Counted from the first letter of the stretch, positions 12,008-52,962 are shown. The stretch is DNA of 64,000 bases from Trichoplax adhaerens (GCF_000150275.1 NW_002060944.1:8074735-8138734), one strand, 5' to 3'. Made by a program: numbers and translations. Notes: generated by a model not told the origin, from the letters alone.

Positions 12008-13928
12008 ATGGTCTTAGATGCTATAAGTGAAAATCAAACTGAATCAACATTTCAACGTCGTAATAGTTGGCCACTTATTGAAGAACAGCAACAAGATAAT
12101 TACAATCAAGAAGGTAATCTATGTCAGCTAACAACAAATCAACGGCGTATCTTACGTGATTTCCGACGACTATCACAAGCAGTCGTTAGTATCCCCAAGA
12201 AGGATTCTCTTAAAAAATCCTATCAATCAATTCATTATGTTGCCGCTAGAGTAGGAGGAATAGCTAAAAAATGTATAGGGTTTTTATTTCAATATGTATG
12301 GGATATTGTTTCGGCAGATTATGCTTATATTTCAGAACGTGCCGATTTAGAAGGGAGTTCTGCTATGGATTCTTCTTTAGCCAATCTGTTGAAAAATGTT
12401 CGCTATGAAAATTATCAATTACGATTAGGCGATGATTTGTATGGAAACATTGTTCGTATGCCGTGGAGTTATATCTTTAGCCTGATTGCGGCGGCTTATT
12501 TAGCTGTTAGTATAATCTTCACCTTTGCTTATTTCGTAGCCGATATTCTCGATCTGGATCTGTCTTCTTCAATTTGGCAATGGTTTGTTTATAGCTTATC
12601 GACAACAACGTGTTTAGGTTCAGACAGTCTTGATTCCGATCGTGTCCATCTTTTCATCTTATTGATTGCTAACTCGCAAGCATTTGTATCCCAATTATTA
12701 TTAGCATTTGTCACTGGAATCGTTTTTGCTCGTTTTTCTCGAGGACGTAGTCAAATTCGCTTTGCTGATAAGTTAACAATAAACCCAGTCAATGGTATCG
12801 ACTGTTTGCAAGGCAGATTAACTCCATGTCGGCCACGATTTGGTGTTATTGATTGTAATTTAAGGTTATTCGTTTCCAGACCATATCAGAGTAAAGAAGG
12901 AGAGCACGGTGTAAGGACTAAGTAAGTATGTCTATACTCGATGATGGTCTTAGTGTTACAAAGATTAGTATCATTTTTCCCCTAAGCTATCGCATATTTG
13001 ACACCGATCGTTATCAGGAATCCCACAATTTAATTAATAAAATAGCATGGCTTTATTAATGTTATCTAGTTGGCATAGGATCAAGAAAATTGCACTTTGT
13101 TCTTTAAATAAATGGAATAGAAGAGTTCATTTAATATGTACAATTCCAAATTGTAGACAAAAATGGCCAATTCTTAGCAATTTCATGCTAGAAAACATAA
13201 TTATTAAAGCCTCTAGCAATTATAACCACAATTAACAAAATAAATTTAAAGCATAGGAAACTAATCCTTTCTTAATTGCTTATTATGAAGGCAAGTTCCT
13301 CTTTTAACTGAAACTCTACCAGCCATGTCAATAATGTTAAAGTTTACTCATCGATTAGACGAATCTAGTGAAATTCGCCAAGCAATGGAATTGGGTGAAG
13401 ATTATTATTTGTCTATTACTATTACTGGGGTGGATGCTTGTACTTTAAATCCTATCTTTGATGTGAGAAGATACAAAGCCAATGATATCATAAAGTTAGT
13501 TTTACTACTACTATTAACCTAAATATACGAAAACAAATGTGTGTATATATAAGTATAGAGAACACAATATAATCTTTTCTAAATCGTTAAATAATGCATT
13601 CCACGACGAAAGAAAAAATTTTTCGAGTTAATGCGTCTTTTATATTATTTCTGACCTTGTTGAGATTCATATACTAATAGTAGGTAATATTAGATTCATA
13701 AGTAAATTACCTTAAGTATTTAGCAATTTAGCTATTATGTATGTCCGACTTATTTCCTACTGTTTCTTCGATAGAAATTATAGATTTATCGATATGATTG
13801 AAAAGGTGAAACCGGAGCCTGGATTATCTCTATGCCATTCTAAAACCGTAATCGATTTCAATAAATTAAATAAAGTAACTCCTATAAAAGAGCCCAGCGA
13901 AAGTGACGATAAAGATAAAATGGACTAA
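12008..13928 (+). CDS. Kir-fold channel-like protein, copy 1 (423 aa), filter TCLGSD; exons 12008-12921, 13291-13494, 13775-13928
   Basis: Slide helix DDLYGNIVRMPW, M1, pore helix FVYSLSTTT, M2 ending TGIVFARFSR, and cytoplasmic-domain motifs KEGE, HRLDESS, G-loop TGVDACT, RFIDM, IDFNKL. Two phase-2 GT-AG introns restore a full ORF. Confidence 0.9.
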
Positions 13929-16058
13929 CAATAATCATTATTGAACATGCGAACAAAATTTAACGAAATGAAAAATTATACCAATCTGCTTGGACAAAAT
14001 AGTATTAGATATTAAATCAATTGCTTGGTTTTAATCAAAGGGAAGGATCTGATGAAGACCCGGATAAAAAGTGATGTCTATGCAATAAATGAATATCTTC
14101 AATCGTCTTTTGCTTTGTATCTACACACAAAGCCTGATTTATACTTCGAGAGTGGCCACATCGAATACGAAAGATAAAATAAAATTGAATTTTCTACCAA
14201 ATCAATTGTATAGAAAATCAGAACAGTATTTGATTGCTGCTCTAATAATTTTATTTCTTATATGTATTTATCATACCGTATCGAAAAAAATTTGCCACAT
14301 CAGTGAGTAATTTACTGCACGAAGATAATTAAGAATGTTGCATATATTCTCTTTCGAATTCTGATCAATGTAAAACGTTAACTGAATTTGGCATTTTTAG
14401 GCCCGCTATTAGCAATAAGACATTAAAGTTTACGTTAATCATGAATACGGGTAGCATTAAATCACATTCATCGTTGTAGCATATTTGATTAGAATCTATT
14501 TATTTGTGTCATTAGTAATGATGATTTACAACAGAAATGCTTATGACTAGTAGCCAGGACAAATGTTAACTTAGTGGCATTGGTTATTCAGTATCAGCTA
14601 AAAATACGTCAATTTTATTAATAAGGATAATATAAATCATATTTATCAATCTACTGTATTCAGGTATTAAATTATTTATTCGCGTTCTTGGCAACGATGA
14701 TAAACAAAGAGATAACTATGCAAAAAAAGTATTTTTAAAAATTAAACTTCCAAAAGCTAGCTATGAAATCTAGGTCGGAATTAATATGAATAGATGAATC
14801 TTCTAACAATGTGATGCATAACTAATTATTTCTAGACGAGAGATATAAAAATTTAACTCTTACACGGTATTATATGACAATATTAGTAGCTACAGCAGAC
14901 TACAAAGATTGTATATATATACCTATGTTATACATCTATAAAATAGATAAATCGTTACAGCAGCTATTGAGTAGAATTAATCATTTCTATACAGAGAAAG
15001 AGCTTTACCATGGTTATAAAAGAACTTATTATTCGCTCAAGAAATGATGATAACTAGCTTAATTAGCAACGTTACTATTGCTTAAGGTATTAATTAAGCA
15101 CGATAAAAGTCGGAATCAAGCTATCATGAATGAATATGAATATCAATTGTAATAGTAATTAATTGCAATCTAATGCCATAGATGATAACTTGCTGATAGA
15201 ACGGTCAAATTGTAGCTGTTTAGCTACTTTAACAGTCAAATGTCATGGGTCTAATTACCGAGAGAAACCAATAAAATACATAGAAAAGCAAATAGTTTCT
15301 TATCTCATATCACGCTAATTAAATTAAACTACCGTACATTGAATCGGTTATTGGTATAATCCCAATTGTGCAGTTATCAAGATCTCCAATTACGTGTACC
15401 CTATCAAACTGGAATTAGTTAATAGTTATCAACTAATTTCTATAAAATAAATTACAACTGGTGCCTGTAGCTGTCATCTATTTTAATAATACAATTCCCA
15501 TGCTATAAATACCACATAGCGAGACATTCTACCGCTATCGGACTGTAATAAAGAAACCATGATATAGTTCGAATTTACTAGTGTACTAGATGAATGACCG
15601 CCAATATAATTTACGACAATGAATAAATTTATTGTTAAGAAATAGATAATTATCTAAAAATAATAGTTAAATGGTCTCCCATAATAATAATTTCTTGGTA
15701 ACATCTTCTCGTAATGATAGGACTTGCTATTACATGACCCTCAATCGCGTTAGTTCAATAACATTTCGGTAAACGATTATTTGATTTCCTGTTTTCATAG
15801 CCACGTATCGATGCTACTATTTGACTACTTTATCTGTAACAATCCATTGTAAATTAAGTTCATGTTATTCTTTCTATAATTTGTCTGCCTAATATTGACA
15901 TCGACTGAGATAATTCCATCTTGATAAAAGTATCATTTCCTGTTTAATAGGTCTTAGCATATGTAATTCATATCATTTGTTGTCAAATCGGTGGAAAGAA
16001 AACGAATCGTTTCTTCACTCACTTACAAAAATCACAATACTAGCCGAATACATTACAA

Positions 16059-17758
16059 ATGGCCGTCAATTTATCTAGTTCTGATCACCATCTTACTCAA
16101 TATGAACGAATAAGGCGTCGACTTAGTTTGCCTAATTTTCAACAAGATCCCATCGGTGATTCTATTCATCCTTCCGATCTAATTTCAAGTCAAAATCAAC
16201 ACCGATTTGGGCGTCATTATCGACGTGTATCCGTGGCTATGAGTAGAATATCGGAAAGAGATTCAATTCAGAACAGTTTACGAGCAATCAGAAACATGAT
16301 TTCTGCCATATACCAATTTATCAAGAAATGGGTCATGGTGATTATTCAGCACGCTTGGGATATCATTTGTTTGAACTATGCGACTATGTCTGAACGTGCT
16401 GATCTTGAGGGACGATCGGCTATGGACTCCTTTTTAATTAAAATTCTAAAAAATGTCCGCTATCAAAATTATCAAATTCGGTTAGCTGATGATTTATATG
16501 GTAATATTATTCGCATGCCTTGGAGTTACATCTTTGGATTAATCGCTATGATGTATTTATTTATTAGCGTTCTATTTACATTTACTTATGTAGCCGTTGA
16601 TAGTCTTGATCTTCATTTGGGTTATTCATTTTGGCACTGGTTTGTCTTTAGTTTATCAACTACAACATGCCTTGGCTTAAGTAATCTCGATGCTGATCAA
16701 GTTCATATCGGCATCTTGTTAATTGCTAACTTCCAAGCATTTATATCTCAACTATTACTAGCCTTCATAACTGGTATCGTATTTGCTCGTTTCTCACGAA
16801 GACGAAGTCAAATTCGATTTGCTGAAAAGTTGATTATAAATCAGATGGATGGTATTGATTGCATTCAAGGACGATTAACTCCACATCGGCCTCGATTTGG
16901 TATTTTTGATTGTAACATTCGATTGTATTTAAATCAGCCCTACGTTACTAAAGAAGGAGAATGTGGACTTAGGACAATGTAAGAATTAATTTTCGCTATA
17001 TGTTAATGGAAGCCATGTTTAAAAGTTTCAAAGGGAGCGTTTACGATTTTACTTGATTTGTTGATGATAGGCAACTCTACAGTAATAATAGTAATTTCTT
17101 TTCATTAATTATACAAAGTATTAAATATTTTACATTCATTTTTCTACTATCATTAGCTAAAATTTACTTCGTTATGAACGAAATGATATCGTTGATCACA
17201 ATAGTTGTTTGATTGGACTTATGAAAGGCAATGACTAAAAATAATGTCTAATCTTACTATTCTAGAGAGGTTCCATTATTGATAAATAATGTCCCAACCA
17301 TGGCTATCATGATGAAGTTTACCCATCGATTAGATGAATCTAGTGCAATCAGAAAAATGATGATAGACCCTAACAGTGATTTTAGTTTAATGACAACTCT
17401 CTCAGGTGTTGATGCTTGTACTCTAAATCCAATTTTTGACGTTAAAAGATACCATCGAACTGATATCAAAAGGTGAGCTATACTTTATTATTCTTTTTAA
17501 ACTTTAAATTATTAATATTTAGATATAAATTGAATTTGAAATTAGATAAATTGGCATTCTTTTAATATTATAATTATATAATAACGTTATTTTTACGGGA
17601 TCATTTGTATTAGAGATCACAGGTTTGTTGACATGTTGGAAAGAATTTATACGAGTGAAACCGAAAGTGAAGTTCACATCGATCTCAATAAATTAGATCA
17701 AATCATACCAGATCAAAATGGAATTGAAAAAGCGAAGGATAAACAAACTAAAGCATAA
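16059..17758 (+). CDS. Kir-fold channel-like protein, copy 2 (423 aa), filter TCLGLS; exons 16059-16978, 17266-17472, 17614-17758
   Basis: Same motifs and intron positions as copy 1; 207-nt exon 2; spliced frame open to TAA at 17756-17758. Confidence 0.9.
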
Positions 17759-18895: not shown

Positions 18896-19096
18896 ATCAT
18901 TTTTGTAAGTGCCAAATTAGGGAAAGCATATTACATTTATCTTGCCTATTACTATATGACAGATACCGGCAAGGCTAAAAGATTTCGCTGAAGACGTTAT
19001 CATTCTGTAATTATCGAATTAGGGTAGCATATCACACCTATTTATCTTGTCTACAGCTTTATATCCGTCATCATTGGCAAAGTTAAAGATTCGCTA
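18896..19096. repeat. Diverged tandem duplication, ~103-bp unit x2
   Basis: atcatt.tgtaa...aattaggg.agcatat.aca...tttatcttg.cta...ggcaa.g.taaa.gatt.cgct occurs twice. Confidence 0.65.
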
Positions 19097-24822: not shown

Positions 24823-27800
24823 ATGCCAAGATCACCTATGGAAGTACCCGATTTTCAAATTAACGATACCCCTAGAACGCCTAAGAGACGTCACAGTTGG
24901 CCAGCTATTTCCCATCGTTGTTGCAATTTAGCTTGTCAAGGCCATCATCATTCCATTTCGATGCATCCACGGCGATTAATTCGTCATCTATCTCATATTG
25001 TATCGAATACCAGTATTTCACACTCGCCTTTGCTTCGAGCAACATTACAATCCTTTTTATTAGCTATGCTTGCCACGAGCCAATTCATCAAAAAGTGGTC
25101 CATCATCATTATTCAGTACGCTTGGAAACAAATTTGTTTAAACTACGCCGCAGTCTCGGAAAGAGCTGATCTTGAAGGAAGTTCAGCCATTGATGATAAA
25201 TTTGCCGAACAACTTAAAAATGTACATTTTCGAAATTATCAGATTCGATTAGACAACGATTTATTTGGCAATCTTGTACGAATGCCATGGAGTTATATCT
25301 TTGGCCTGTTTGCTGTGGCCTACTTGACCATCAGTATCGTATTTACCATTACATATACAGTAGCGGACATCATCGATTTTGATCTTTCTTATACATTTTG
25401 GTATTGGCTAGTCTTTAGTTTATCAATCACAACATGCTTAGGCTCGGAAAACTTAGATCCTAATCGTGCTCATCTATTATTAATCTTGATTTCTAATTTG
25501 CAAGCATTTATCTCGCAAATATTGCTGGCTTTTGTTACTGGAATTGTTTTTGCTCGTTTCTCTCGACGACGATGTCAGATTCAATTTGCTGATAAATTAA
25601 TTATTAATTCGGTTGACGGAGTTGACTGTCTCCAAGGAAGACTAACACCCATTCGAGCACGATATGGTATCTTTGATTGCCATATAAAGCTATACCTAAC
25701 CAGAGGATATCGTACGAAAGAAGGAGAACATGGTATTCGAATTACGTAAGTCTTAGCTAGAAGGATAATTCTACTATTTATTACAATTTTTCGTCCATTT
25801 CCATCCCAGTAGAACTAATCTTTGACATATTATGAAATGTAATTAATCTTTTATATCTATCTGGTCCTGAATGACAAGATTAATTGTAATAAATTCTAGT
25901 ACGCTAATATGAAAGCTACTACTTGGAGGAAAGATCTTCTATACATGCGATCAATTTGCTCTACTCTTCATCGACTAACGTCATGAAAATAATCTCTTGC
26001 TTAATTAACATTACGACGATTTGTAGTGCACTATCGTACAAGTCAGAACGAGTTCAGCAATCCATAGAGGATTCTTAAGGAATAAACTAGGTAGATAAAA
26101 ACAAATTAATAGTTGACCATGATGGCAACGGCAATATTACGTCAATCTTTCATTATTTTCAATATCAACTAATAAAATTCATAACTAACATAAATATTTG
26201 ATGGGCATCATTTTTAAAGTAGGTTATGACTTATCGTGTGACAGTAAAAATTTCTTTGCAAGAGCTGATTAGAAATAAAGCTACACAGAAAATAGTTAAA
26301 GTGATTTACGGAGCTACAGTAAAGGGCAAAGCCTTATCAATGGGATTAGTTGAATAGTTATAATAAATGATAATAATGTTAGAAAACAGTATTTTGGCAA
26401 TATAAACGAACAAAATATCGCCCCTAAATTAGATAACAAAGCAAGAATATGTAATCAAAGATCTGAACGTATTGTTCTGGGTAATTTTATCTATCTTATC
26501 TAGATATCAGTAGTTTTTAATATGAAGTAATCGACTGTATACAGTAATTAATATCGAGTAAAAATTAAAAATTCTTCTTTACACTTTATCATCTCTTTTA
26601 TTGAATAATTATGATGTATCCAGATATGAATTGGCATACTTTTATCTTTATGCTAATCAATCGATACTGTCATAGATAGATGCCGGTAGCTGAGAGTTCT
26701 TAGGTATAAATGTATCTCTGGACGAGTAAAAATTGAACATTCTTCTCTATCATTCTATCATCACTTTTATTAAATAACTGAATGCATCCTGATATGAATT
26801 GGCCACGCTTTTATCTTTATAATAATCAACTGACTCTTCCATAGAGAGATACAGATAGTTGAGGGTTCCTATATACCAGTGGATCCCTAGACCAGTAAAA
26901 ATTGAAAATTCCTCTCTACGACTCCATCATCACTTCTATTATTGAATGGCGTATTCTTCAGATATCCATTGGCGCACTTTTAATTTTTATTCTAATCAAC
27001 TGATACTGTCATAGAAGGGTGTGGGTATTCGAGCGTTCTTAAGTATAAATGGACCCTAGTTCTTTACAAGAGAATCTTAATAGACTATAGATAATCTTAA
27101 TAATACAGTTCTACGACTTAAAATTGAGTACAGTAAATCAATGACGGTTATTGCTTGCCTACTGCTGTTATAGTCAAGGTGTTGTATTCAAAACACTATC
27201 ATTATAGTTCTCTAGTTTGGAGTAAATGTAGTATCTGCCTTCTATGTAAAAGATACATTAATAAACAGCGATCAAAGGAAAATTTTAACTAATATTACAG
27301 ACTTTAGCCTATATTGATCCATATTGATCCGTTAGCACTTTTCTGCTAGGTAGATATAAATAGAGACTACTTTTCACATCTTTATGCTAATCAACGTCTA
27401 TCGCAAGTTTGTAAGAAAATCAGTTCTTTAGTAAGAGGCCGATAATAAAAAGTAAGATGGTAGCATCCGTCCTTAGGGGACTAGTAGTGTCAAAGATACT
27501 ACATTTAGGCGTAGAATAGTCGAGTGCTATTAGTGAGTAATTTAGGGACGATAGCTGCTGTAGGCGATAATGTATGGCGCCTGGGTAGGCGGTGTCATGT
27601 ATTATGAGAAATGGAGCAACTAGCATATAATCAACTACAGTGCACTATAGGCGGTATCAACATATCTCAGCAGTTATAATGGAGGATATAAAAGACTGAT
27701 CCTTTAGGAGTACATTCAACCTGAGATCTAGCTGTGTGCCGATTACATGTCTAGGTTTTAATGCTATAATACTCAACAATAATTAAGTAATAAACTGCTT

Positions 27801-30800
27801 CTATCTGCTAATAATGGAAGATAATTTATTGAGAAACTTCTCTATGATAGAGATAGAAAATAGTACCGTACTAACTACAAAATTATAATTCATGAAAGTA
27901 AAGAGTGCATAAGCGTAAATGAAGCACTAATTTAGTGCAGGAGGACTTACTATACTGGAAAATTTTTATAACCACCGATACGCTTGAGTTCTAGCCTATA
28001 AACGTTGATATCTTGACTAGCGTTCTCGTCTGTACCACTAATTTATATATTGCAGTTGAATATAAAATTAATACTATTAAATATAGGGTCGCGGATCCCT
28101 TATATTAGATATATAAATATAGAATGGCTAAATTCCCATTTAGTTTGAGGAGACTAAAAGGAGTAAAATTAACCAGCTATTTTACTAATATCCATCTGTA
28201 GTAAAACTGAAATCAAGAAAATGCCAGTGGATAGGAACAACTAGTTATAGCAATATTTTAGGAGTCCAATGTCCAAGAAAGATAAACTAACAATTAACGA
28301 AAAGGCTTTACTTTTATATTGTATATTGATTCGTTGAAGGCTAGGATAGATGAAGTAATTCATGTAGTACTTGGTTAATTAAAGAGCAAAATCCGTACAC
28401 TTGTTGTATAAACTACAAGTCTTTAATTAAATATCCATCATTTTACGTTATTTAATTGAAAAAATAGGTTAGTAAACATCGATTAATCACTAGAGGATAT
28501 CTAATTCTTAGTTTAAGTGATAGAATACGTATATCAAAAACACATTATCTAAAAAGCTACTGAATTTTACTATACATTTATAAAAATACCAATATCTAAT
28601 TCTAATTTTAATTCGTTCAATATTAAAGTAAAATTGCAATATCTTACCGTATAAGATTGTGTTTGTTTAAACTTCTACAGCATTCTTTTCAATCTTCTGT
28701 CATATTATAGTAGAGTATTTTCAGTACCAAAATTAGTTGATTAATAGTGAGCCATTCCAGTAGAATCTCAAGAAAATAACACTGATCCTATCCTGTCATG
28801 GTTTGATATGAAATCGTGCCCCATATTTTCGATGAGAGATTACAGTAATTATTTATTGAAATGCAATTCTTTGTACACCCATACTATTGTCTATCAGATG
28901 AATAATAGTCAAAGCAATATCTAATTAGTCATCTAAAATTTATCTAAATACTCCAAGTACTACAATCTCACCATCTTATGAAATTACAAAAATTGGGCCG
29001 TCACTGTATTGCATAAACTATAGCCTCTATGGGCTAAAAAGATTGATATTAGCACGAAGATGCTAACTTTTTGAACAATAAGAATATTAGAATACTTTAG
29101 ATTGCTCTACTTGATAGTTACAATGAAGTCTTCTATGCAAAATTTCCAATTAAAAATTAGTCTACGTGACCTATAACAACTTTTCCAAGGTGATACGTGA
29201 CCATTAAAATCAATTTTACATTGCTCTGTCATTTAACCGTAAAGATGAGGAAATCAATTTGGAATTGCCAGCTAGAATGATCCTAGACAGGTTGTCATGT
29301 TCGAAATTGATCTGTTAATAAATGCACTTGAATTATCACAAATGAAGCCATATGGTTATTTTTATACTAACTGCGATAATGTAGTTAAATACTAGTAATA
29401 AGATTTTTAGATTGCAGCAAAAGTTCATATCCTTAAAGTAATCTCAGTCTGATAATGATTTCTTTCTACTCCTTTTCAATACAATCTAAACCCTCGTAAG
29501 CTATGCATTCACTACTATGTAGAACGAGTATATTTCCACTATTGAAGGTCATAGGCAGACTAGATGGTGCCCAGAAGGGGATCCCTTCGACGTGATAGGA
29601 AATCTTGATTACTCCTTTTTCCTAGAAGCAGGGTTTATAGGTCATCATATTATTATTAATTTACCAAATACGTGACCAATAAAATCATTTTGACCGCTTC
29701 CTGTTTGATCGCTTTGAGGATAGAAAATGTCAACGTGTGAAAGTAGAATAAGATTAGTTACTGTATAATTAATTACTCTAGTGCAGCTTGGAGTTTAACC
29801 TTAAATGAATTCAATTATGCTAAATGGAAAATTAGTAGTAACTATTCATATTAGTTCCAGGGGTACCAGTGAATCTGCAATCACGATTACCATATGCGAG
29901 AAAGAAAGATACAATAAGATTAAACAGTGTATAATTAATTACTTTAGTGCGGCTTGAAAGCTTAGCTCTAAATGAATTCAATTATGCTCAGCGAAAAACT
30001 TACAGTAACTTTTATTTCAGCTTCGGTGATAGTAGTGAACAAAAAATTACGGAAATCATACATGAGAAGGAAAGGCAAAACTTTACTTTCAATTAAATCT
30101 TAAAATCGTAATCACATTCTTCGAACTCTTTCCGTTGTTTCTCTAAGTTGTATTCTTAGTTTTAAAAATCTTGCATTAAGAAAGGTAGTATACGTTGATG
30201 CTATCATTAGATTATCCTAACCAGATTAGAGTATCGATATAGCTATTGCATATCAAATTACCACAATTGGATATCTTAAATTATTTCCAGAAACGAGTCC
30301 AAAGTCTATTCTATTAATATTAATTCGAGTAGTACGTGACTAGCGAATTAATTTTGGTATAATGTCTGAACTTTAATACATAGAGGGAATTAGTGGGAAT
30401 CATGAATAGATTATGTTATACGAGTTTTAGGAAAAATTGCCACAAAAGAGTGCACAAGCATTTCGCTCTCTAAAATGATCTAATGACTTTAAAATAATGA
30501 CATCTGATGAAATAGCATTTAACAGCTATAACCTGCCTATTTGGTCAATGATGAAAATTCAATATGAAAACGAAAGAAATATACCAATCCACTACCTGTT
30601 CAAAATAAAAATGATCTATATATTTCATTATAACATTTGCTGGCAGGTATCGCTTTGAATGTTATTTCAATATATATCTACTGCGAACAAAAGAAAATCA
30701 ATGCCATTAATAAATAATGCTTGATTACGATATAGAGATGAAACATTCCTGTATAAAATGGATATCATTAAGCACTCTAAGTGCTCCACCTATCCTGTAT

Positions 30801-33015
30801 GTGGGTCCATGGTCAATTTATATCAATTTGGCAGACTACATGACTGTTAACTTATAAAGCCATTTCGCCATATTGTCTCTACATAATGATAGGCGATTCC
30901 AAAAGAATCATTCTATATTATTTGGCATGACTGTAATATTAAGGAGGGCTATCCAAATTACTTGCAAAATAACTTGATATCATGTAACCCAATTTAGTGG
31001 CTGGTTTATGTCAGTTTCAGAAATACTAACATTTGCAAACAAGAACAATACAATATGAAATTGAAAGGAGAATAACAGGAGCATATTTAAAATATCATAA
31101 AATTCCCAATATCATGTCTATTTCTGACAATAGCGTGTTGTTAATATAAATTAATTACGGTTCAACTATATTGTGGATATAAATATGCAAGGTATAAAAT
31201 CGATGAAATTAGGTATTTAATATAGTTTATTAGTATATTTGAACCCTTTATAGTAGTATTTCGTCTCAAAATCGCCTATTCTAAACTAAAGTAATCAATC
31301 TACTAATGTTATATGGTATGACAAGCTTCTGCGTTGCTTTTTGAACCCTATTGAATGCGTGAACTCTTTTTCAGGTAGATGTAATTTATCTTCCCTTAAT
31401 TTGCTTCATCAAAAAGAAATACTCTTAAATTTTGAGGATCTCAAATAATCAGAGCTCACTCTACTCCATTTTAAAATCACTAGTTGATTGGATGGACAAG
31501 TTTTATGCCGCAATTTAAAATAGTATTAATTAATAAAAACATTCCACGGATCCAATCGTACAAAGATCTATTCAATTCACTCAATACAATTACTTTTTGC
31601 TCTTTACATGGTATCCCTAATGATCGATAGCCCCTTGGAGTATAAATTCTTCTTTAATTATCTTTATGAAAGCCTTCTAAATCGTTTTACATTCAAAATT
31701 GTTAGTTGCAAATGGAGTCACGTAGTAGAAGGAAAGGAGATTTTAGGTCACGTACCATGTGACACCTAGTGGGATAGAATTCATCGTTTTGTCACCTCAA
31801 GGCTTAAATGGCGTGAATTCTTTTCCATGAATAGACAGTAATTGTAATAGTAGCCTTACTTGTACACTATTACTTCACTGAATCACTACGAAAATGATTA
31901 GGGACAATGAAGATTGATCATGATGTATATCCACATCTCTTTCCATAGTTATTCTTGTTTTATTTCGGGTATCTTAAGTTAGTAAGAATATTACTTGCAT
32001 GTATAGTACAGTAACAGTATAACTGGAATAAACTATCAGTATACTTACAGGAAGTGAAAGCTAAAACTGACTACAATATTCTATCATCCCTAGTCGATTT
32101 CGTTCCTTCATTTAGTCATTCTACTGTTTATTACTGGTATAGATTAAACTACTAATATTCTAATAGAGTAACGGAACTTAACCAATCGGACTATTCCATC
32201 GTTATATATTTATTTTCTCTTTTAAGCTTCTTGATTTAATATTGTTAGACTAACTAATTTTTCAACTCAGTTGCAATGCCGATTGTAAGTTAATTCAGGT
32301 ATAGCTAGAATGGATTATCAATTTCTATTAAAGTATCAAAGATTATAGGCTGCTAGTTCCAATGCCACTGATAAATTTGAGCGATGATAAATAGTTACCT
32401 TCAGTCATTGCAATTGCTTATATCAAACTGAGATCTAGACTGAATTAATTTATGAAACAATTTATCTAGCTTATATTTATAACTAATCGACGGGGAATAT
32501 GAAAACATAAAGTAATGAAATATTATTTTAATTGATATCAACCTAGGCAGCTACCTTTAGTTAGTGATAACTTCCCTATTCTTGCATTGATGGTCAAGTT
32601 TACCCATCGACTAGATGAAATGAGCGAGCTTAAGAAAGCAATGATGGATCCTAATGAAGATTTTGGGTTAATGGACACTATCACCGGTGCTGATGCTTGC
32701 ACCTTAAATCCAGTTTTGGACGTTGGCCGATATCGTCATGAAGATATCATAAGGTGCAATCTTTTTTACTATTTACTTCGTCAATTTGAAGCATGATGAT
32801 AGTATTACCTAAACTAGGTGAATTATATACGGTTGCATTACTCTAAATAGTTCGTTATATAATTATCCATGTCTAGGAATTATCATTTTATTGATATGAT
32901 AGAAAGAATACGCATTGAAGCCGACAGCAATGATCATGAACTTTACGTGGATTTTAATAAATTAAACCAAGTTATTTCGCTAGATAAGGCGGAGGAAGAA
33001 TTAGCTACTGATTAA
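24823..33015 (+). CDS. Kir-fold channel-like protein, copy 3 (422 aa), filter TCLGSE; exons 24823-25745, 32547-32753, 32877-33015 (6.8-kb intron 1)
   Basis: Exon 1 ends AC|GTAAG at the paralogous position. The next paralogous exon 2 (QLPLVSDNFP...HRLDEMSEL...TGADACTLNP, 207 nt) and exon 3 lie 6.8 kb downstream, in frame with no stops. Confidence 0.85.
26555..27058. repeat. Tandem repeat, ~168-bp unit x3, in Kir copy 3 intron 1
   Basis: agtaaaaatt.aa.attc...catc.ct..tatt...gatat..attggc...ctaatcaa..gatactgtcataga starts near 26555, 26723 and 26892. Confidence 0.85.
29762..30075. repeat. Tandem duplication, ~166-bp unit x2, in Kir copy 3 intron 1
   Basis: tgtataattaattact.tagtgc.gcttg...taaatgaattcaattatgct at 29762 and 29928. 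Confidence 0.8.
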
Positions 33016-33523: not shown

Positions 33524-33903
33524 AAATTGAGCTAATCAGTAGATAATTAAGACGATGGAATATTACAAAGTTATGGCCTATTTAATCATTTCATCTCCTA
33601 CAAGCATTATTAATCAAATTCGGTTTAGTTACGTCCTTAAAAAAGAAATATAAGACTTTTAATACAACAGAATGTTTAGTCGTATGGTAGTCAGACCACC
33701 ATAAATTAGCCAGGCAAATTGAGATAATCAGTATGCAATTAAGACGATGAAATATTACAAAGCTATGGCCTATTCAATCATTTTATCCCCTACCAATATT
33801 ATCAATCAATTTCGGTTTGGTTACATCTAACAAACAGAAGTATATGACTTTTAATGCAGTAGAATATTTAGTTCTTATGGTATTATATGGTACTCGGACC
33901 ATT
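33524..33903. repeat. Tandem duplication, ~192-bp unit x2
   Basis: aaattgag.taatcagt...aattaagacgatg.aatattacaaag.tatggcctatt.aatcattt at ~33524 and ~33716. Confidence 0.85.
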
Positions 33904-36221: not shown

Positions 36222-37760
36222 ATGGCTTTTCAAAATGCTCAAGATATCAAGAATGCCGCAATACAAGAACGTCGACATAGCTGGCCACATCAGCCAAGGA
36301 TGATGTATCCTAACTTTAGCTCAAAAAATAGCTCAAGGTTTAATTCACTATCGTATCTACGACGATTATTTCGCCGGATATCTCGAGTTATTGCCGATAC
36401 TCTAATGCAACCTAATCTTCTTTGTATGACCGTCAATGCAATTCCGTGGATGATACAATCACTCTATCGATGGATCAAGAAATGCATCATCTTCTTATCT
36501 TTATATCTATGGGATTGTGTATGCTTAAACTATATCAGGGCTTCAGAACGTGCTGATTTAGATGGAACTTCGGCGATGGATGATTCATTAGCGAATAGAT
36601 TAAAAAATGTCCATTTTCAAAATTACCAAATCCGCTTAGATTATGATCTATACGGCAATATTGTACGAATGCCATGGAGTTATATTTTCAGCCTCTTTGC
36701 TATGATCTATTTAGTTACTAGTATCATCTTTACCTTTGCTTATGTTTGTGCCGATTTAATTGATTTTGAACTTGGTTATTCATGCTGGCATTGGTTAGTT
36801 TTTAGCCTATCGACCACTACATGCTTAGGTTCCGATAGTCTGGATCCTGATCAAGCTCATCTTTTATTAGTTTTGTTAGCTAATTTACAAGCTTTCATAT
36901 CTCAGTTATTACTAGCATCGGTGACTGGTATAGTCTTTGCTCGTTTCTCACGACGACGAAGACAAATTCAATTTGCCGATAAATTAATCATCAATCGTAT
37001 TAATGGTGTTTCCTACTTGCAAGGAAGATTCACACCCATTCGACCAAGATATGGCGTATTTAATTGCATTATTCAGTTGTACTTAACTCGATCCTATCAT
37101 ACTGAGGAAGGAGAGAACGGCTTTAGTGTTCAGTAAGTGAATGCGGGTATTAGTTAGAACAATTCATTAAGGCCTATCCTTTCGATGTTGTTTTCCTTAT
37201 ACCCATTATCGATTAATATAACCTTGACGGATTCGATTATTGTTTTAACTCTATTCTCGATCATTACAGTGCATTACCGCTTGCTTGTGATACATTCCCA
37301 ATTGTGGCTATGGCGGTTAAATTTTCTCATCAATTAGATGATTCAAGTCTTCTTAGGCAAACCTTGACGAATTCATCGAAAGATTTTGGTCTAATCGTTT
37401 GTGTCATGGGTGCTGATGCTTGTAATATGAATCCAGTGTTTGATCTTATTCGATATCGTCGAGAACATATCGTCAAGTAAGACAAGAGCAATTTCAGTTG
37501 AATTTTACTTTGCAGTTTTGTGTTTTTAACATACATTCTAACATACTTAGATTCTGAAATAAATTCGTGCATTCATTTTCTTGCTGTTTATTCATTCTGT
37601 TGTCTATGCTTGCAGAAATGCTCGCTTTGCCAATATGGTAGAAAATATCTATTCCAAAGACAACAAAAAAGATGTTTATATCTTTTGTGATAAATTAAGT
37701 CAAGTCATACTGTTGAAAGATTATGAAACGGAAGAGAGTTCTGAAGGCAAAGAAATATGA
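36222..37760 (+). CDS. Kir-fold channel-like protein, copy 4 (420 aa), filter TCLGSD; exons 36222-37132, 37270-37476, 37616-37760
   Basis: The first ATG is at 36222 (the ORF-track start is a TTG). Paralogous motifs and phase-2 introns are present, and the frame is open to TGA at 37758-37760. Confidence 0.9.
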
Positions 37761-41622: not shown

Positions 41623-43210
41623 ATGGCTATATTAAATCATCCATCCAATCAAGTTTATCCGCAACGACGGCATCGACGCCAAACTTGGCCATCTACCAAA
41701 CGTCAATCTCGTAAAAATATTCGCGGCAATCAAGGTCGATGCCAACTATTCAAACAACGACGACAATTATTGCTTGACTTCAGCCGGCAAACTCTATCCA
41801 CCCTCTCAATAGATAATTATTCGTCTCAGAGTTTCTCTCGATCTATATTAAATGCTATTAAAGCGTTAACACAAATCATCAAGGAGTGGCTGATCTTATT
41901 GGTTCGCTTTATGTGGAATGTAATTTGCCTTAACTATGCTGAAATTGCCGAACAAGCAGATTTTGACGATAACACTAATTTTAGCAGTATTTTATCTAGG
42001 AGAATGAAACAAGTTACCTATAAAAATTATCGACTTAACTTAGGAGATGATCTCTATGGTAATATTATTCGATTACCATTCAGCTATATGTTTATACTTA
42101 TTGGTACGATCTATCTTAGTATTAGCATTGCCTTTGCTACAACTTATATCCTAGCTGATGTTGTCGATCTTGAATTAGCTTATTCTCCTTGGTACTGGCT
42201 AGTTTATAGTTTATCTGTAACGACATGTTTAAGCTCGGAAGGTTTAGATATTAGTCGTGTCCATATCGGTATACTCTTGATCGCTAATTTACAAGCTTTT
42301 ATAGCTCAGTTGTTATTGGCATTTGTCACCGGCATCGTTTTTGCTCGATTCTCACGACCTTCTCGTCTAATTCAATTCTCTGATAAGTTAACTATTAATT
42401 CAATCGATGGTACTGATTATATTCAAGGAAGGTTAACAACAATTCGACCCCGACTTATTGTCAGCGACTGCCAGATAAAATTGTTTATCGTACGGCCCTA
42501 TGAGACTAAAGAAGGAGAAAATGGTGTCCGAACTACGTAAGAATTCTAGCAATTAGATGATATTGAAGACGTGAACGAAACATTTTCCATCGAAAGCTTT
42601 CTCATTTATAATAGTTAAGGCCCAAAAATAAATAAAGCGCTCATAACCTCATCTAAGTAGATTGGAATGTTCTTCTATAATGATTTAGCTTAAAACCATG
42701 TTCTTTCATTTCATAAAATAACTTGTGCTCCATTTAATCCGATACTTTCATTTGTAATGTTTTCAACTTTTAGGGAACTCGCTTTAGTCAATAATGCTTT
42801 TCCTACAATGGATTTCATGATCAAATTTTCACATCAATTAAACGATGAAAGTTTACTTCGAAAAGCAATAGAGACTCCAGATGAAGATTTGATCCTATTG
42901 GCCTACTTTACTGGCACGAATGCTTGTTCTTACAATACTATGTATGAATTAAAACGTTATTCTCGCGAAAATATCTTTAGGTAAGTCGTAAAATAAAAGT
43001 GTATGAATGATTACTTTATTAGCACAGACTGATAGTTTAACGAAGAGCTACCTTAACTAAAAGTGCTATCTGCAATCGTTTTTATCTTGGACTAGACACC
43101 ATCAATTTGTGGACATGATCTCTATAGACAAAGCTGAAGAAGGTGTCGAAAAATTTATAGTCGATTTCGCCAAATTAAATCAGCTTATTCCATTTGATCA
43201 AACTAAATGA
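41623..43210 (+). CDS. Kir-fold channel-like protein, copy 5 (411 aa), filter TCLSSE; exons 41623-42536, 42774-42980, 43096-43210
   Basis: Paralogous motifs (TGIVFARFSRP, KEGE, HQLNDESLL, HHQFVDM, VDFAKL) and intron positions; intact spliced ORF. Confidence 0.9.
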
Positions 43211-46844: not shown

Positions 46845-48444
46845 ATGGCTATATTAAATCATCCATCCAATCAAGTTTATCCGCAACGACGGCATCGACG
46901 CCAAACTTGGCCATCTACCAAACTTCAATCTCGTAAAAATATTCACGGCAATCAAGGTCGATGCCAACTATTCAAACAACGACGACAATTATTGCGTAAT
47001 TTTAGACGGCAAGTTGTAACCACCCTCTGCAAAAATAATTATTCGCCCCAGAGTTTCTCTCGATCTATATTAAATGCTATTAAAGCATTAGCGCATATCA
47101 TCAAGGAGTGGCTGATCTTATTGGTTCGCTTTATGTGGAATGTAATTTGCCTTAACTATGCTGAAATTGCCGAACAAGCAGATTATGGCGATAAAACCAA
47201 TATAAGCAGTATTTTATCTAGGAGAATGAAACAAGTTACCTATAAAAATTATCGACTTAACTTAGGAGATGATCTCTATGGTAATATTATTCGATTACCA
47301 TTCAGCTATATGTTTATAGTTATTAGTACGATCTATCTAGGTGTTAGCGTTGTCTTTGCTATAACTTATTTCCTAGCTGATGTTGTCGATCTTGAATTAG
47401 CTTATTCTCCTTGGTACTGGCTAGTTTATAGTTTATCTGTAACGACATGTTTAAGCTCGGAAGGTTTAGATATTAGTCGTGTCCATATCGGTATACTCTT
47501 GATCGCTAATTTACAAGCTTTTATAGCTCAGTTGTTATTGGCATTTGTCACCGGCATCGTTTTTGCTCGATTCTCACGACCTTCTCGCCTAATTCAATTC
47601 TCTGAAAAGTTAATTATTAATTCAATCGATGGTACTGATTATATTCAAGGAAGGTTAACAACAATTCGACCCCGACTTATTGTTAGCGACTGCCAGATAA
47701 AATTGTTTATCGTACGGCCCTATCAGACTAGAGAAGGAGAAAATGGTGTCCGAACTACGTAAGAACTCTAGTTTTAGGTTATGTTGATGTCATAAACGAA
47801 TCCCTTTCTCTTGAAAGCTTTCTTGTTCACCATAATAAAGATTATAAAATAAATTAAGCGCTTATAACCTCATCTAGACAGATTAAAAAATTTTCCTCTA
47901 CAATGATCTAGCTCGAAATTGCTTTCCTTACATTTTATAAATGGATTATGTTTCATTTAATTCGACATTTTCGCTTTTCAATTTTTAGAGAACTCCCATT
48001 AACAAATAGTATATTACCTACATTGGATATCATGATCAAATTTTCACATCAATTAAATGATGAAAGTTTGCTTCGACAAGGATTAGAGACTCCAAATGAG
48101 GATTTTTTCCTATTGGCCTACTTTACTGGCACGGATGCTTGTTCTTACAATACCATGTATGAATTAAGGCATTATCGACGCGAAGATATCAAAAGGTAAG
48201 TCGAGAAGTAAAATTCTATGAATTATTACTTTACTAGCGTTAGCTAATATGCAGATGGAGAGCTACCTTTACTGAAACAGTTATCTGTAATCATTTTACT
48301 TTTGATAGAAACCATCAATTTGTGAACATGGTCTCTCAGCTCGAAGCTGAAGATGATACTAAAAAATTGACAGTCGATTTCTTCAAATTAAATCAACTCG
48401 TTCCACTTGATCAAACTAAACAAGAGTTATCAAAACTGCAATAA
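46845..48444 (+). CDS. Kir-fold channel-like protein, copy 6 (418 aa), filter TCLSSE; exons 46845-47758, 47989-48195, 48309-48444
   Basis: Closest to copy 5 in exon 1; intact spliced ORF with conserved phase-2 introns. Confidence 0.9.
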
Positions 48445-50889: not shown

Positions 50890-51130
50890 TCATCATCCAC
50901 ACGTTATGCCAACTAAGTATACTGTTCTCTATTCATCCTAAGTTTGATCTTTAATCTGTTCTCTACTAGTCATCATCATCCACCCTTTATGCCAACCAAG
51001 CATACTGTTATATATTTTCATCCTAAGTTGATTTTGCATCTGTTCACTAGTAAGTCATCATCCTCCACCCATTATATCAACCTAGTTGACTGTCCTATAT
51101 TCATCTTAAGTTGATTTTGGATCAGTTTAC
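50890..51130. repeat. Local triplication of a ~80-bp upstream segment of Kir copy 7
   Basis: catc.tccac...ttat..caac..ag...actgt...tattcatc.taagtt.gat occurs three times here and once at the equivalent place upstream of copies 5 and 6. Confidence 0.75.
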
Positions 51131-51385
51131 TACTTTACCTTGCGGTATATTCATCAAGTATAGGTGATAAAACTATCATCTTCATGTTGAAATTTAAACG
51201 AATTATCCAAGAAATAGACTTTAGGAATATCATTCGATCGATTAAAAGTAATTTGGTAATAGACGCGATCGAAGGATAGTTCTTAGTCTTTGAATTATCA
51301 TTATCAACAAGTAAATAACATTAGAAGGTTTTATGGATTACGCTTTACCATTTTAAACTTGAACGATCCTAATCAATCTTCATTA

Positions 51386-52962
51386 ATGGCTACACTAAAT
51401 CATCCATCAAATCAAATTAACCCACAACAACGGCAACGACGCCAAACCTGGCCGTCTACTAAACGTCAATATGGTAAAATTCATCAAGGTAGTCAAGGTC
51501 AATGTCAATTATCTAACCAACAACGACAATTATTGCGTGATTATAGACGGCTTTCACAAGTTGTAACCACCATCTCCAAAGATAAACATTCATTTCGTAG
51601 TCTCTCTCGAGATATATTAAATGGCATCATAACGTTAGTACAAATCATCAAGGAGTGGATAATTGTATTAGCTCGCTTTATATGGAATATCATTTGCCTT
51701 AATTATGCTGAAATTGCCGAGCAAGCAGATTTCGGTAATATGTCTAAAATCAGTAGTACGTCAGTGAGCAGAATGAAACAAATTATTTTTAAAAATTATC
51801 AACTTCGCTTGGGAGATGATTTTTATGGTAATATTATTCGACTGCCATTCAAGTATATCTTTACCTTAATTGGTATGATTTATCTTGGTGTCTGCGTTGT
51901 CTTTGCTATAACTTATGTCCTAGCTGATATTATCGATCTTGAATTAGCTTATTCTCCTTGGTACTGGCTAGTCTATAGTTTATCTGTAACGACATGTTTA
52001 AGCTCGGAAAGTTTAGATATTAGTCGAGTCCATATCGGTATACTCCTGATCGCTAATTTACAAGCTTTTATAGCTCAGTTATTATTGGCGTTTATCACTG
52101 GTATCGTTTTTGCTCGATTCTCACGACCTTCTCGTCTAATCCAATTCTCTGACAAGTTAACTATTAACCCAGTCGATGGTATTGATAATATACAAGGAAA
52201 GTTAACAACAATTCGACCACGACTTGCTGTCACTGATTGCCAGTTAAAATTATTTATTATACGACCCTATCAGACTAAAGAAGGCGAAAATGGTGTCCGA
52301 ACTACGTAAGAATTCTAATAATTAGATTATGTTAAAGACGTAAACGAACCATTTTCTCTTGAAAGCTTTCTTATTTACCGTAATTAAGATTGTAAAATCA
52401 ATAAAGTAATGATCGCGATCTCTTAAACTTCGTCTATGCAGATTGAATTTCCTTTACCACAATCTAGCTTGAAACGACTTATGTTTCATTTAATTCGATA
52501 TTTTCACTTGCAATATTTTCAACTTTTAGGGAAATCCCTTTAATTAGTAGTCTCTTTCCTACGATGAGTGTCATGCTTAGATTTTCACATAAATTAAACG
52601 AGGAAAGTCTACTTCGACAAGCTTTAGAGAATCCAGATGAAGATTTTAACTTATTGGCCTACTTTACTGGTACAGATTCTTGTTCTTTCAATACCGTCTA
52701 TGAAATAAAACATTATCGACGCGAAGATATCATTAGGTAAGTTGACTTTATTAGGTAACGGTTGATAGTTCAACCAAGAGCTACCTTGACTAAGTACTAT
52801 CCGTAATCCTTTTTATTTCCGAACAGAAATCATCAATTTGTGGACATGCTCACTAACATCGAAAGTGAGGATAACACTTATAAATTTTCAGTCGATTTCG
52901 CCAAATTGAATCAACTCGTTCCGTTTGACCAAATTAAACAAGAGAAATCAAAGGTGCAATAA
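51386..52962 (+). CDS. Kir-fold channel-like protein, copy 7 (420 aa), filter TCLSSE; exons 51386-52305, 52530-52736, 52827-52962
   Basis: ATG at 51386 aligns with copies 5/6 (MATLNHPSNQ); intact spliced ORF to TAA at 52960-52962. Confidence 0.9.

What the first reader, a model, noticed from the sequence alone, without database searches (positions are those of the whole stretch)
12008..52962. Seven-gene array of intact Kir-fold channels that have all lost the GYG potassium selectivity filter
Seen: the pore loop aligns without gaps to the Kir consensus F-S-I-E-T-Q-T-T-I-G-Y-G but reads (Y/F)-S-L-S-(T/I/V)-T-T-C-L-(G/S)-(S/L)-(D/S/E). Filters: TCLGSD (12608-12625), TCLGLS (16665-16682), TCLGSE (25432-25449), TCLGSD (36819-36836), TCLSSE (42223-42240, 47445-47462, 51992-52009). 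The pore-helix Glu (Kir2.1 E138) is Ser, and the partner Arg and turret disulfide Cys pair are not recognisable. All seven ORFs and splice sites are intact, and the altered pore is among the best-conserved segments, so this is not decay. Known: TxGYG/TxGFG is needed for K+ selectivity, and single changes (weaver GYG>SYG) give Na+-permeable channels. Inference: a lineage-specific family of non-selective cation, Na+/Ca2+ or other-solute channels built on the Kir scaffold, or modulatory subunits. An acidic ring at the outer mouth in 6 of 7 copies hints at cation or Ca2+ handling.
Basis: partly seen in the sequence, partly recalled or inferred. Interest (0 to 1): 0.92.

Follow-up and report, generated by a model that had tools for sequence, protein, structure and literature searches.

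The report
Placozoan Kir-fold channels without potassium filter
Trichoplax carries seven neighbouring genes for proteins built like inward-rectifier potassium channels but with the potassium-selecting motif replaced by a conserved new one, so they are probably non-selective cation pores, a design known until now only from a few bacteria and a trypanosome.

Summary
The window is Trichoplax adhaerens DNA. It holds seven tandem, same-strand, three-exon genes, and these are the only members of the family in the genome. All seven filter coordinates are exact.

The proteins have the Kir/KirBac fold (AF2 pLDDT 84; Foldseek KirBac3.1 9e-23). Where K+ channels read T-x-G-Y-G, these read C-L-(G/S)-(S/L)-(D/E/S). 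Five orthogroups, each keeping its own filter variant, recur in other placozoans. Pore helix, filter and TM2 are the best conserved parts (dN/dS 0.06-0.13). One canonical TIGYG Kir lies elsewhere on the scaffold.

The kind is not new. Prokaryotic NirBac channels (non-selective) and T. brucei TbIRK (still K+-selective) are Kir-fold proteins without the signature. I found no paper on the placozoan genes, which databases label as K+ channels.

Best reading (about 0.5): gated tetrameric cation pores that are not K+-selective, with a NaK/CNG-like half-filter and an acidic mouth.

Origin is unresolved. The family lies outside crown animal Kirs and lacks their insertions, but a sister position is not rejected. 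Its nearest relative is an unplaced metagenome protein with a similar filter.

The parts
12008..13928 (+). Gene 1. Exons 12008-12921, 13291-13494, 13775-13928 (423 aa). Not annotated in T. adhaerens; its orthologue in Trichoplax sp. H2 is P0001 (99%).
16059..17758 (+). Gene 2 = TRIADDRAFT_53815 (P0003). Exons 16059-16978, 17266-17472, 17614-17758.
   Evidence: exact mapping
24823..33015 (+). Gene 3. Exon 1 is 24823-25745; exons 2 and 3 are 32547-32753 and 32877-33015 (annotated alone as TRIADDRAFT_53817). Intron 1 is 6.8 kb, carries about 169-nt tandem repeats, and has not been tested by RNA.
36222..37760 (+). Gene 4 = TRIADDRAFT_53818 (P0007). Exons 36222-37132, 37270-37476, 37616-37760.
41623..43210 (+). 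Gene 5 = TRIADDRAFT_53819 (P0010). Exons 41623-42536, 42774-42980, 43096-43210.
46845..48444 (+). Gene 6 = TRIADDRAFT_53820 (P0012). Exons 46845-47758, 47989-48195, 48309-48444.
51386..52962 (+). Gene 7 = TRIADDRAFT_53821 (P0008). Exons 51386-52305, 52530-52736, 52827-52962 in the three-exon reading. The annotated fourth exon 53225-53314 is doubtful.
12608..12625 (+). Filter of gene 1: TCLGSD in place of T-T-I/V-G-Y-G.
16665..16682 (+). Filter of gene 2: TCLGLS.
25432..25449 (+). Filter of gene 3: TCLGSE.
36819..36836 (+). Filter of gene 4: TCLGSD.
42223..42240 (+). Filter of gene 5: TCLSSE (the glycine-free type).
47445..47462 (+). Filter of gene 6: TCLSSE.
51992..52009 (+). Filter of gene 7: TCLSSE.

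Best explanation
The seven genes encode pore-forming subunits of a placozoan-specific branch of the Kir/KirBac superfamily.

Architecture of each subunit:
- A family-specific cytoplasmic N-terminal extension of about 135 aa. It holds an invariant R-R-x-S/T-x-P motif and a 50-residue helix.
- A slide helix, TM1, a short turret, a pore helix, a re-made filter and TM2 with the conserved G-I-V-F-A-R-F bundle-crossing segment.
- The beta-rich Kir cytoplasmic domain.

Four subunits, alike or mixed among paralogues, form a gated pore.

Inferred filter mechanism. The lower half of the K+ filter (T-T-C-L-G) is still recognisable. The upper Y-G half is replaced by S/L plus D/E/S, followed by a further near-invariant Asp. 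The pore would then keep at most two ion sites below a wide acidic vestibule, as in NaK (TVGDG) and CNG channels. It would pass Na+ and K+ with little discrimination and bind or pass Ca2+ at the mouth.

Shown: the anatomy, fold, conservation and predicted tetramer. Inferred: conduction, selectivity and regulation by basophilic-kinase phosphorylation or 14-3-3 binding at R-R-x-S-x-P.
For: Fold:
- PDB sequence search gives KirBac1.1 at 1e-10 over residues 142-298.
- The AF2 model with 123 sequences has pLDDT 84.2 and the elements in Kir order.
- Foldseek gives KirBac3.1 at 9e-23 and Kir2.2 at 3e-20.

Filter replacement is aligned without gaps.

Selection:
- S196, L197, S198, T200, T201, C202, L203 and 17 TM2 positions are invariant among 11 placozoan sequences.
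- Mean pairwise identity is 0.75 for pore helix and filter and 0.81 for TM2, against 0.27-0.44 for the N-terminus.
- For g5/g7 and g6/g7, dN/dS is 0.13 in the pore loop and 0.06 in TM2, against about 0.4 overall.
- Five orthogroups are shared with other placozoans. Each keeps its own filter variant (GSD, GLS, GSE, GSD, SSE/SSD), while the N-termini are only 37-65% identical.

Assembly: four copies of residues 136-380 score ipSAE 0.61 against a best control of 0.00. The runs agree in at least 81% of contacts and partner pLDDT is at least 68. The mark was reached by 21 of 30 solved homomers and 0 of 23 monomers in the tool's calibration. The pass may be from memory of solved Kir tetramers.

Precedent: NirBac1.1 and NirBac1.2 are Kir-domain proteins with non-canonical P-loops. 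They form tetramers and give non-selective monovalent cation flux (PMC4607889).

A separate canonical TIGYG Kir exists in the same genome, so K+ inward rectification does not depend on these genes.
Against:
- TbIRK shows that a Kir homologue without the signature can remain K+-selective.
- The Pfam IRK model passes its gathering score only for gene 1 (23.1 against 22.7). The other copies score 10-19 bits.
- Genes 5-7 have no glycine in the filter, so a K-channel-like backbone conformation is doubtful there.
- g5/g6 give dN/dS of 0.85. This is distorted by gene conversion of exon 1.
- The AF2 filter geometry leans on GYG-bearing homologues in the alignment.
Confidence: 0.5

Rival explanations
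1. The proteins are non-conducting or modulatory subunits. They assemble with each other or with the single canonical Kir and tune, silence or localise it, or they act as Kir-shaped sensors or scaffolds without ion flux.
For: - GYG-mutant Kir subunits are classic dominant negatives (established knowledge).
- One canonical Kir is present.
- Seven paralogues could give combinatorial regulation.
- No conduction has been shown.
Against: - The filter residues themselves are invariant and kept per subtype across genera. A dead pore would not need this.
- The bundle-crossing gate segment is the most conserved stretch.
- The family differs from the canonical Kir at five indel landmarks in turret, TM2 exit and cytoplasmic domain, which makes co-assembly less likely.
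- The homotetramer prediction passes.
Confidence: 0.2
2. The proteins are pores for something other than alkali cations. The ring of four Cys at the foot of the filter and the Asp/Glu rings would coordinate divalent or soft metal ions (Ca2+, Zn2+), or the pore would pass protons, ammonium or small organic cations.
For: - C202 is invariant at the Thr site.
- D/E stands at the last filter position in 6 of 7 copies, and D209 is near-invariant.
- N222, Q224 and Q229 are invariant polar residues in TM2.
Against: This rests on side-chain chemistry alone. NirBac1.2 was not Ca2+-permeable. HCN channels carry Cys at the same site and conduct Na+/K+ (established knowledge).
Confidence: 0.12
3. The proteins are still K+-selective channels that use a non-canonical filter, as TbIRK does.
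For: TbIRK (filter GGYVG) keeps PK/PNa above 7 (PMC5429665). Databases name these genes as K+ channels.
Against: - There is no aromatic residue and at most one glycine in the filter; genes 5-7 have none.
- Single changes in GYG already abolish selectivity in Kir3.2 weaver (established knowledge).
- NaK and CNG channels, which have comparable half-filters, are non-selective.
Confidence: 0.07
4. The array is made of decaying or unexpressed duplicates of no function.
For: - No RNA evidence could be obtained.
- Gene 3 is split by 6.8 kb of repeat-bearing DNA.
- g5/g6 dN/dS is 0.85.
- Pfam scores are weak.
Against: - Seven of seven CDS are intact with canonical splice sites.
- Orthologues of five groups exist in other placozoans with 59-92% identity in the membrane core.
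- Constraint on pore and TM2 is strong.
- For g5/g6, introns are 70-85% identical while exon 1 is 89-99% identical.
Confidence: 0.03

Closest known systems
NirBac channels (NirBac1.1, 1.2, 2.1; Zubcevic et al. 2015, PMC4607889)
   Same: They have the full Kir/KirBac architecture with a P-loop that lacks TxGYG, form tetramers, and give non-selective monovalent cation flux. The NirBac2.1 filter TTGTD has the same G-(S/T)-D pattern as the placozoan CLGSD.
   Different: They are prokaryotic, single genes, and lack the N-terminal extension. NirBac2-like genes that I recovered from Gemmatimonadaceae (filters TTGSA and TTGTA in L013 and L014) cluster 100* with local GYG-bearing KirBacs, not with the placozoan clade. 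The likeness is therefore convergent. The NirBac1 P-loops share nothing with K+ filters, whereas the placozoan pore helix and lower filter are still alignable.
TbIRK of Trypanosoma brucei (Steinmann et al. 2017, PMC5429665)
   Same: It is a eukaryotic Kir homologue without the signature sequence, found only through a weak Pfam IRK match.
   Different: Its filter is GGYVG. It is K+-selective, localises to acidocalcisomes, and is a single gene. It is a different lineage.
KirBac1.1 / KirBac3.1
   Same: These are the best sequence and structure matches. They share the short turret, the absence of the +3 insert after TM2 and of the beta-D/E insert, and the H-x-[IL]-D-E-S-S motif.
   Different: They have a canonical TVGYG filter, no 135-aa N-terminal extension, and lack the +2 post-filter and +1 CD-loop residues.
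Animal Kir (KCNJ) channels, including the canonical T. adhaerens Kir (L001)
   Same: They share the overall fold, the +2 residues between filter and TM2, and the E-G-E motif at the Kir2.1 E224 site. A clade of the family plus animal Kirs is not rejected (AU p 0.76).
   Different: The placozoan family lies outside the crown clade (100*). It has no long Cys-bearing turret, no PKKRAETL-type insert, no Asp/Asn at the TM2 rectification site (Leu instead), and no GYG.
NaK, CNG and HCN pores
   Same: These are tetrameric P-loop pores in which partial loss of TVGYG (TVGDG, TIGE-, CIGYG) leaves two sites and gives non-selective cation conduction. An acidic residue follows the Gly, and HCN has Cys at the Thr site.
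   Different: Their scaffolds differ (2TM without a Kir domain, or 6TM). The resemblance is functional analogy recalled from established knowledge and was not tested here.
P0062, an unplaced 314-aa protein from a JGI metagenome contig
   Same: It is sister to the placozoan clade in three trees (SH-aLRT 90-96). It shares Ser at the pore-helix Glu site, a filter ending in G-L-S like gene 2, the N/Q/Q pattern in TM2, and the +2 and +1 indels.
   Different: It is only 24% identical, has no N-terminal extension, and its organism is unknown. The tree tool flags the join as a meeting of long branches.

Membership tests
Kir/KirBac superfamily (Pfam IRK + IRK_C) | Slide helix, TM1, pore helix and loop, and TM2, in that order | tested here: met
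   The AF2 model has H144-149, H153-182, H189-200, loop 201-214 and H215-244. Alignments agree.
Kir/KirBac superfamily (Pfam IRK + IRK_C) | Beta-rich cytoplasmic Kir domain after TM2 | tested here: met
   PF17655 is precomputed for five members. The cytoplasmic-domain pLDDT is about 95. Foldseek hits cover 270-310 columns of Kir chains.
Kir/KirBac superfamily (Pfam IRK + IRK_C) | Score over the Pfam IRK gathering threshold | tested here: inconclusive
   Gene 1 scores 23.1 against 22.7. The other six score 10.5-19.4 or have no hit.
Kir/KirBac superfamily (Pfam IRK + IRK_C) | TxG(Y/F)G K+ signature | tested here: not met
   All seven copies and all placozoan orthologues read C-L-(G/S)-(S/L)-(D/E/S).
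Kir/KirBac superfamily (Pfam IRK + IRK_C) | Tetrameric assembly | tested here: inconclusive
   The prediction passes (0.61 against a best control of 0.00). It may reflect memory of solved Kir tetramers and is not a measurement.
Kir/KirBac superfamily (Pfam IRK + IRK_C) | K+ selectivity and inward rectification | not testable with these tools
   This needs electrophysiology or flux assays.
Crown animal Kir (KCNJ) | Long turret with the conserved extracellular Cys pair | tested here: not met
   The turret is short and KirBac-like, about 20 residues shorter, and has no Cys.
Crown animal Kir (KCNJ) | Three-residue insert after TM2 and four-to-five-residue insert between beta-D and beta-E | tested here: not met
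   Both inserts are absent.
Crown animal Kir (KCNJ) | Placement inside the animal Kir clade | tested here: not met
   The animal clade, including the canonical Trichoplax Kir, is 100* without the family. A sister position is not rejected.
NirBac (functionally non-selective Kir-domain channels) | Kir domain architecture with a non-canonical P-loop | tested here: met
NirBac (functionally non-selective Kir-domain channels) | Common descent with described NirBacs | tested here: not met
   NirBac2-like genes group with Gemmatimonadota KirBacs (100*), away from the placozoan clade.
NirBac (functionally non-selective Kir-domain channels) | Non-selective cation flux | not testable with these tools
   This needs a 22Na/86Rb liposome flux assay or electrophysiology.

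The most novel reading that the evidence does not exclude
Placozoa keep an old, otherwise unsampled lineage of Kir-fold channels whose filter was rebuilt into a Cys-plus-acidic-ring pore. Expanded to five ancient subtypes, these form Na+/Ca2+-permeable, kinase- or 14-3-3-regulated depolarising leak channels. They would be the first non-K+ members of the Kir architecture in animals. In a nerveless animal that has only one true Kir, they would be a main determinant of resting potential and Ca2+ entry.
Probability: 0.3. Interest if true: 0.8.

Novelty: new variant of a known kind. Interest (0 to 1): 0.62.

Why it matters
Kir channels are treated as uniformly K+-selective in animals. Ion-channel censuses (VGL-chanome counts, UniProt names) count these seven genes as K+ channels. 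If they conduct Na+/Ca2+, Trichoplax has one Kir rather than eight, together with a new class of depolarising channel.

The family also offers seven natural variants of a rebuilt filter on a scaffold that is well understood and easy to study structurally. That is useful for studying how selectivity is encoded. It adds an animal case to the NirBac and TbIRK evidence that the P-loop is an evolvable module.

The family sits outside crown animal Kirs and lacks their insertions. This bears on when the animal Kir features arose.

Tried and rejected
- Papers. Supplements of Najle et al. 2023 held no entry for these genes. The Sebe-Pedros 2018 atlas paper is not held. Searches for the gene identifiers found no paper.
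- An eighth copy. A weak C-terminal-like hit at 10836-11018 has stops in all frames and is chance. The whole-genome search found no copy outside the window.
- Horizontal transfer from bacteria. The best non-placozoan scores are KirBac-type. The free tree does not nest the family in any bacterial group. Holding it together with animal Kirs gave a higher likelihood (AU p 0.76). Transfer is therefore neither shown nor excluded.
- Descent from NirBac2. Rejected.
- Kinship with oomycete or algal Kir-likes, suggested by the protein atlas. Not seen in the tree; those keep GYG/GFG and are tandem two-pore proteins.
- N-terminal extension. No homologue outside the family.
- Fetching the contig of P0062 from metagenomes found nothing.
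- First AF2 run. With 11 sequences it was poor in the membrane part (pLDDT 56) and was replaced.
- Joined models. Joined CDS of the seven genes were built only inside scripts, for codon counts and trees.


Full report
WHAT IS THERE

The window is Trichoplax adhaerens. Five annotated proteins (TRIADDRAFT_53815 and 53818-53821) map onto it at 100% with exact exon boundaries. The assembly has 105.6 Mb in 1414 contigs.

Seven ORFs of 305-339 aa lie on the + strand between 12008 and 52309. Each is exon 1 of a three-exon gene with GT-AG introns, conserved intron phases and one terminal stop.

Three points of annotation differ from the public record:
- Gene 1 is not annotated in T. adhaerens but is in Trichoplax sp. 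H2 (P0001, 99%).
- Gene 7 reads to a stop at 52962, parallel to gene 6. The annotated fourth exon is doubtful.
- Gene 3 is the exception in structure. Its exons 2 and 3 lie 6.8 kb downstream, behind DNA with about 169-nt tandem repeats, and are annotated alone as TRIADDRAFT_53817.

A profile search of the whole genome finds exactly seven first, seven second and seven third exons, all in this window. The orphan pieces therefore belong to gene 3.

WHAT THE PROTEINS ARE

Sequence evidence:
- Pfam IRK matches are weak. Only gene 1 passes the gathering score.
- A search of PDB sequences gives KirBac1.1 at 1e-10 and animal Kirs at 3e-6 and weaker, over residues 142-300.

Structure evidence:
- An AF2 model from a 123-sequence alignment has pLDDT 84.2 and pTM 0.72. 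It shows slide helix, TM1, pore helix, loop, TM2 and a beta-rich cytoplasmic domain.
- Foldseek puts KirBac3.1 (9e-23) and Kir2.2 (3e-20) on top.
- Four copies of residues 136-380 are predicted to assemble. The score is ipSAE 0.61 against a best control of 0.00, the runs agree in at least 81% of contacts, and partner pLDDT is at least 68. The mark was reached by 21 of 30 solved homomers and 0 of 23 monomers in the tool's calibration. The interface includes pore helix, filter and TM2. The pass may be from memory of solved Kir tetramers.

Filter and pore, from HMMER and MAFFT:
- T-[IV]-G-Y-G aligns without gaps on C-L-(G/S)-(S/L)-(D/E/S).
- The pore-helix Glu site is Ser.
- The site of the Kir2.1 Arg partner is Leu.
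- The glycine hinge of TM2 is Ser/Ala.
- The TM2 rectification site is Leu.
- The G-I-V-F-A-R-F bundle-crossing segment is kept.

About 135 residues precede the slide helix and have no homologue outside the family. They hold an invariant R-R-x-S/T-x-P and a helix of 50 residues. The motif fits both the basophilic-kinase consensus and the 14-3-3 mode-1 consensus; this is inference from established motif knowledge. The helix is only moderately hydrophobic, and its place is unexplained.

A single intronless canonical Kir with TIGYG, a long Cys-bearing turret and the animal inserts lies 7 Mb away on the same scaffold.

IS IT UNDER SELECTION?

Conservation among 11 placozoan sequences:
- The pore helix and filter positions S196, L197, S198, T200, T201, C202 and L203, and most of TM2, are invariant.
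- Mean pairwise identity is 0.75 for pore helix and filter and 0.81 for TM2, against 0.27-0.44 in the N-terminus. The pore window ranks 25th of 411.

Trees give five orthogroups shared with other, unnamed placozoans (g1-P0002, g2-P0174, g3-P0004/P0006, g4-P0009, g5-7-P0024). Each orthogroup keeps its own filter variant: GSD, GLS, GSE, GSD and SSE/SSD. N-termini are 37-65% identical and the membrane core 59-92%. Both pore chemotypes are therefore old.

Nei-Gojobori dN/dS on the young triplet:

| Comparison | Overall | Pore loop | TM2 |
|---|---|---|---|
| g5/g7 and g6/g7 | 0.39-0.45 | 0.13 | 0.06 |

Older pairs are saturated at synonymous sites.

g5/g6 give 0.85, but this figure is distorted. 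Their introns and flanks are 70-85% identical while exon 1 is 89-99% identical. That points to gene conversion of exon 1, which removes the synonymous yardstick.

Decay is excluded.

WHERE IT COMES FROM

A profile of the family against 1.84 billion representatives finds only placozoan proteins above 1e-100. The next hits are at 1e-32 and are mostly KirBac-type proteins of about 285 aa, with some oomycete and algal Kir-likes.

In three trees the family is one clade (100*) on a very long stem. It lies outside the crown animal Kir clade (100*), which contains the canonical Trichoplax Kir.

Indel landmarks:
- The family lacks the animal-specific long turret, the three-residue insert after TM2 and the beta-D/E insert.
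- It shares with animal Kirs two extra residues after the filter and the E-G-E motif.

An AU test does not reject the family plus animal Kirs as one clade; the constrained tree was in fact 20 log units better than the quick free tree (p 0.76). The choice is between an early offshoot of the animal Kir stem, an older eukaryotic lineage, and transfer. None is shown.

The nearest single relative is P0062, a 314-aa protein from a JGI metagenome contig. It has Ser at the pore-helix Glu site, a filter ending in G-L-S like gene 2, and the same N/Q/Q pattern in TM2 and the same small indels. The join has SH-aLRT 90-96 but is flagged as a meeting of long branches, and its contig could not be fetched. 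If it is real, the filter change predates Placozoa.

WHAT IS KNOWN

I found no paper on these genes. Censuses count them as Kir. The design has two precedents:
- NirBac1.1, NirBac1.2 and NirBac2.1 are prokaryotic Kir-domain proteins with non-canonical P-loops. The two that could be purified form tetramers and give non-selective monovalent cation flux, and NirBac1.2 does not pass Ca2+. The NirBac2.1 filter reads TTGTD (PMC4607889).
- TbIRK of T. brucei has GGYVG and remains K+-selective (PMC5429665).

I recovered NirBac2-like genes (filters TTGSA and TTGTA) from two Gemmatimonadaceae genomes. They cluster 100* with local GYG-bearing KirBacs, so the G-(S/T)-(D/A) likeness to the placozoan G-S-D is convergent.

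Other isolated signature-free Kir-likes turned up in the profile search. They include one from the protist Gefionella okellyi (P0037). Loss of the signature has therefore happened several times in this superfamily.

HOW IT MOST LIKELY WORKS

The evidence for a working, gated pore is a conserved tetrameric scaffold, an intact bundle-crossing gate and cytoplasmic pore domain, and filter residues fixed per subtype.

The lower filter (T-T-C-L-G) is still K-channel-like. The upper Y-G is gone and is replaced by small or acidic side chains, followed by another near-invariant Asp. By analogy with NaK, CNG and HCN (established knowledge, not tested here) this gives a short filter and an acidic vestibule. 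The expected result is non-selective Na+/K+ conduction with Ca2+ binding or entry.

I put this at about 0.5. The rivals are:

| Rival reading | Confidence |
|---|---|
| Modulatory or non-conducting subunits | 0.2 |
| Pores for divalent, soft-metal or other ions through the Cys ring | 0.12 |
| TbIRK-like K+ selectivity | 0.07 |
| Decay | 0.03 |

VERDICT

The finding is not categorically new. It is a new, animal, multi-gene variant of the signature-free Kir-fold channel, mislabelled in databases and apparently undescribed. Interest 0.62.

EARLIER NOTES OF THIS SCAN

Two first-reader notes on this same window were tested here.
- KirBac-like indels (s1-793295): true for four landmarks, with two animal-like exceptions. 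Horizontal origin is not shown.
- Two pore chemotypes (s1-793349): confirmed, and shown to be ancient.

Noticed in passing
window 41629-42528 against 46851-47750: Exon 1 of genes 5 and 6 is 89-99% identical, while their introns and flanks are 70-85% identical. This looks like gene conversion confined to exon 1, strongest over TM1 to TM2.
   Followed up: partly
window 26640-27051 and 29744-30013: Tandem repeats of about 167-170 nt lie inside the 6.8 kb first intron of gene 3. They may explain why this intron is 20-50 times longer than its counterparts.
   Followed up: no
window 21422-21837 and 23451-23863: Two adjoining inverted-repeat pairs (103 and 113 nt arms, 83-84% complementary) bracket about 1.6 kb between genes 2 and 3. 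This may be a foldback or TIR element without a long ORF.
   Followed up: no
window 33524-33872: A direct repeat of 157 nt (83% identical, spacing 192) lies just downstream of gene 3.
   Followed up: no
window 53225-53314; 12008-13928; 32547-33015: Annotation problems in the public T. adhaerens gene set. TRIADDRAFT_53821 carries a doubtful fourth exon instead of the stop at 52962. Gene 1 has no model. TRIADDRAFT_53817 is only the C-terminal two exons of gene 3.
   Followed up: partly
residues 17-22 of each protein, e.g. window 12056-12073: An invariant R-R-x-S/T-x-P stands near the N-terminus of all paralogues and orthologues. A second R-R-x-S follows about 35 residues later in genes 1-4 and 7. 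The first fits PKA-type and 14-3-3 mode-1 consensus motifs.
   Followed up: no
L001 988-2133 (-), G000:C1413:1072-1074 kb: The single canonical Trichoplax Kir (TIGYG) is an uninterrupted ORF, unlike the three-exon divergent family.
   Followed up: no
P0048, P0066, P0146, P0306 (Aphanomyces, Phytophthora, Pythium): Oomycete proteins carry two complete Kir units in one chain, each with a GYG/GFG filter. This is a tandem two-pore Kir architecture.
   Followed up: no
P0037 (Gefionella okellyi, EukProt): A malawimonad Kir-like protein of 403 aa also lacks the signature; its pore region reads S-L-S-L-L-T-A-Q-G-M-A-G. In the trees it does not group firmly with the placozoan family.
   Followed up: partly
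L013 and L014 (two Gemmatimonadaceae genomes, G002 and G001): Each genome has one canonical KirBac and one NirBac2-like paralogue, with filters TTGSA and TTGTA. The NirBac2 type is therefore more widespread in this family than the single described gene.
   Followed up: partly
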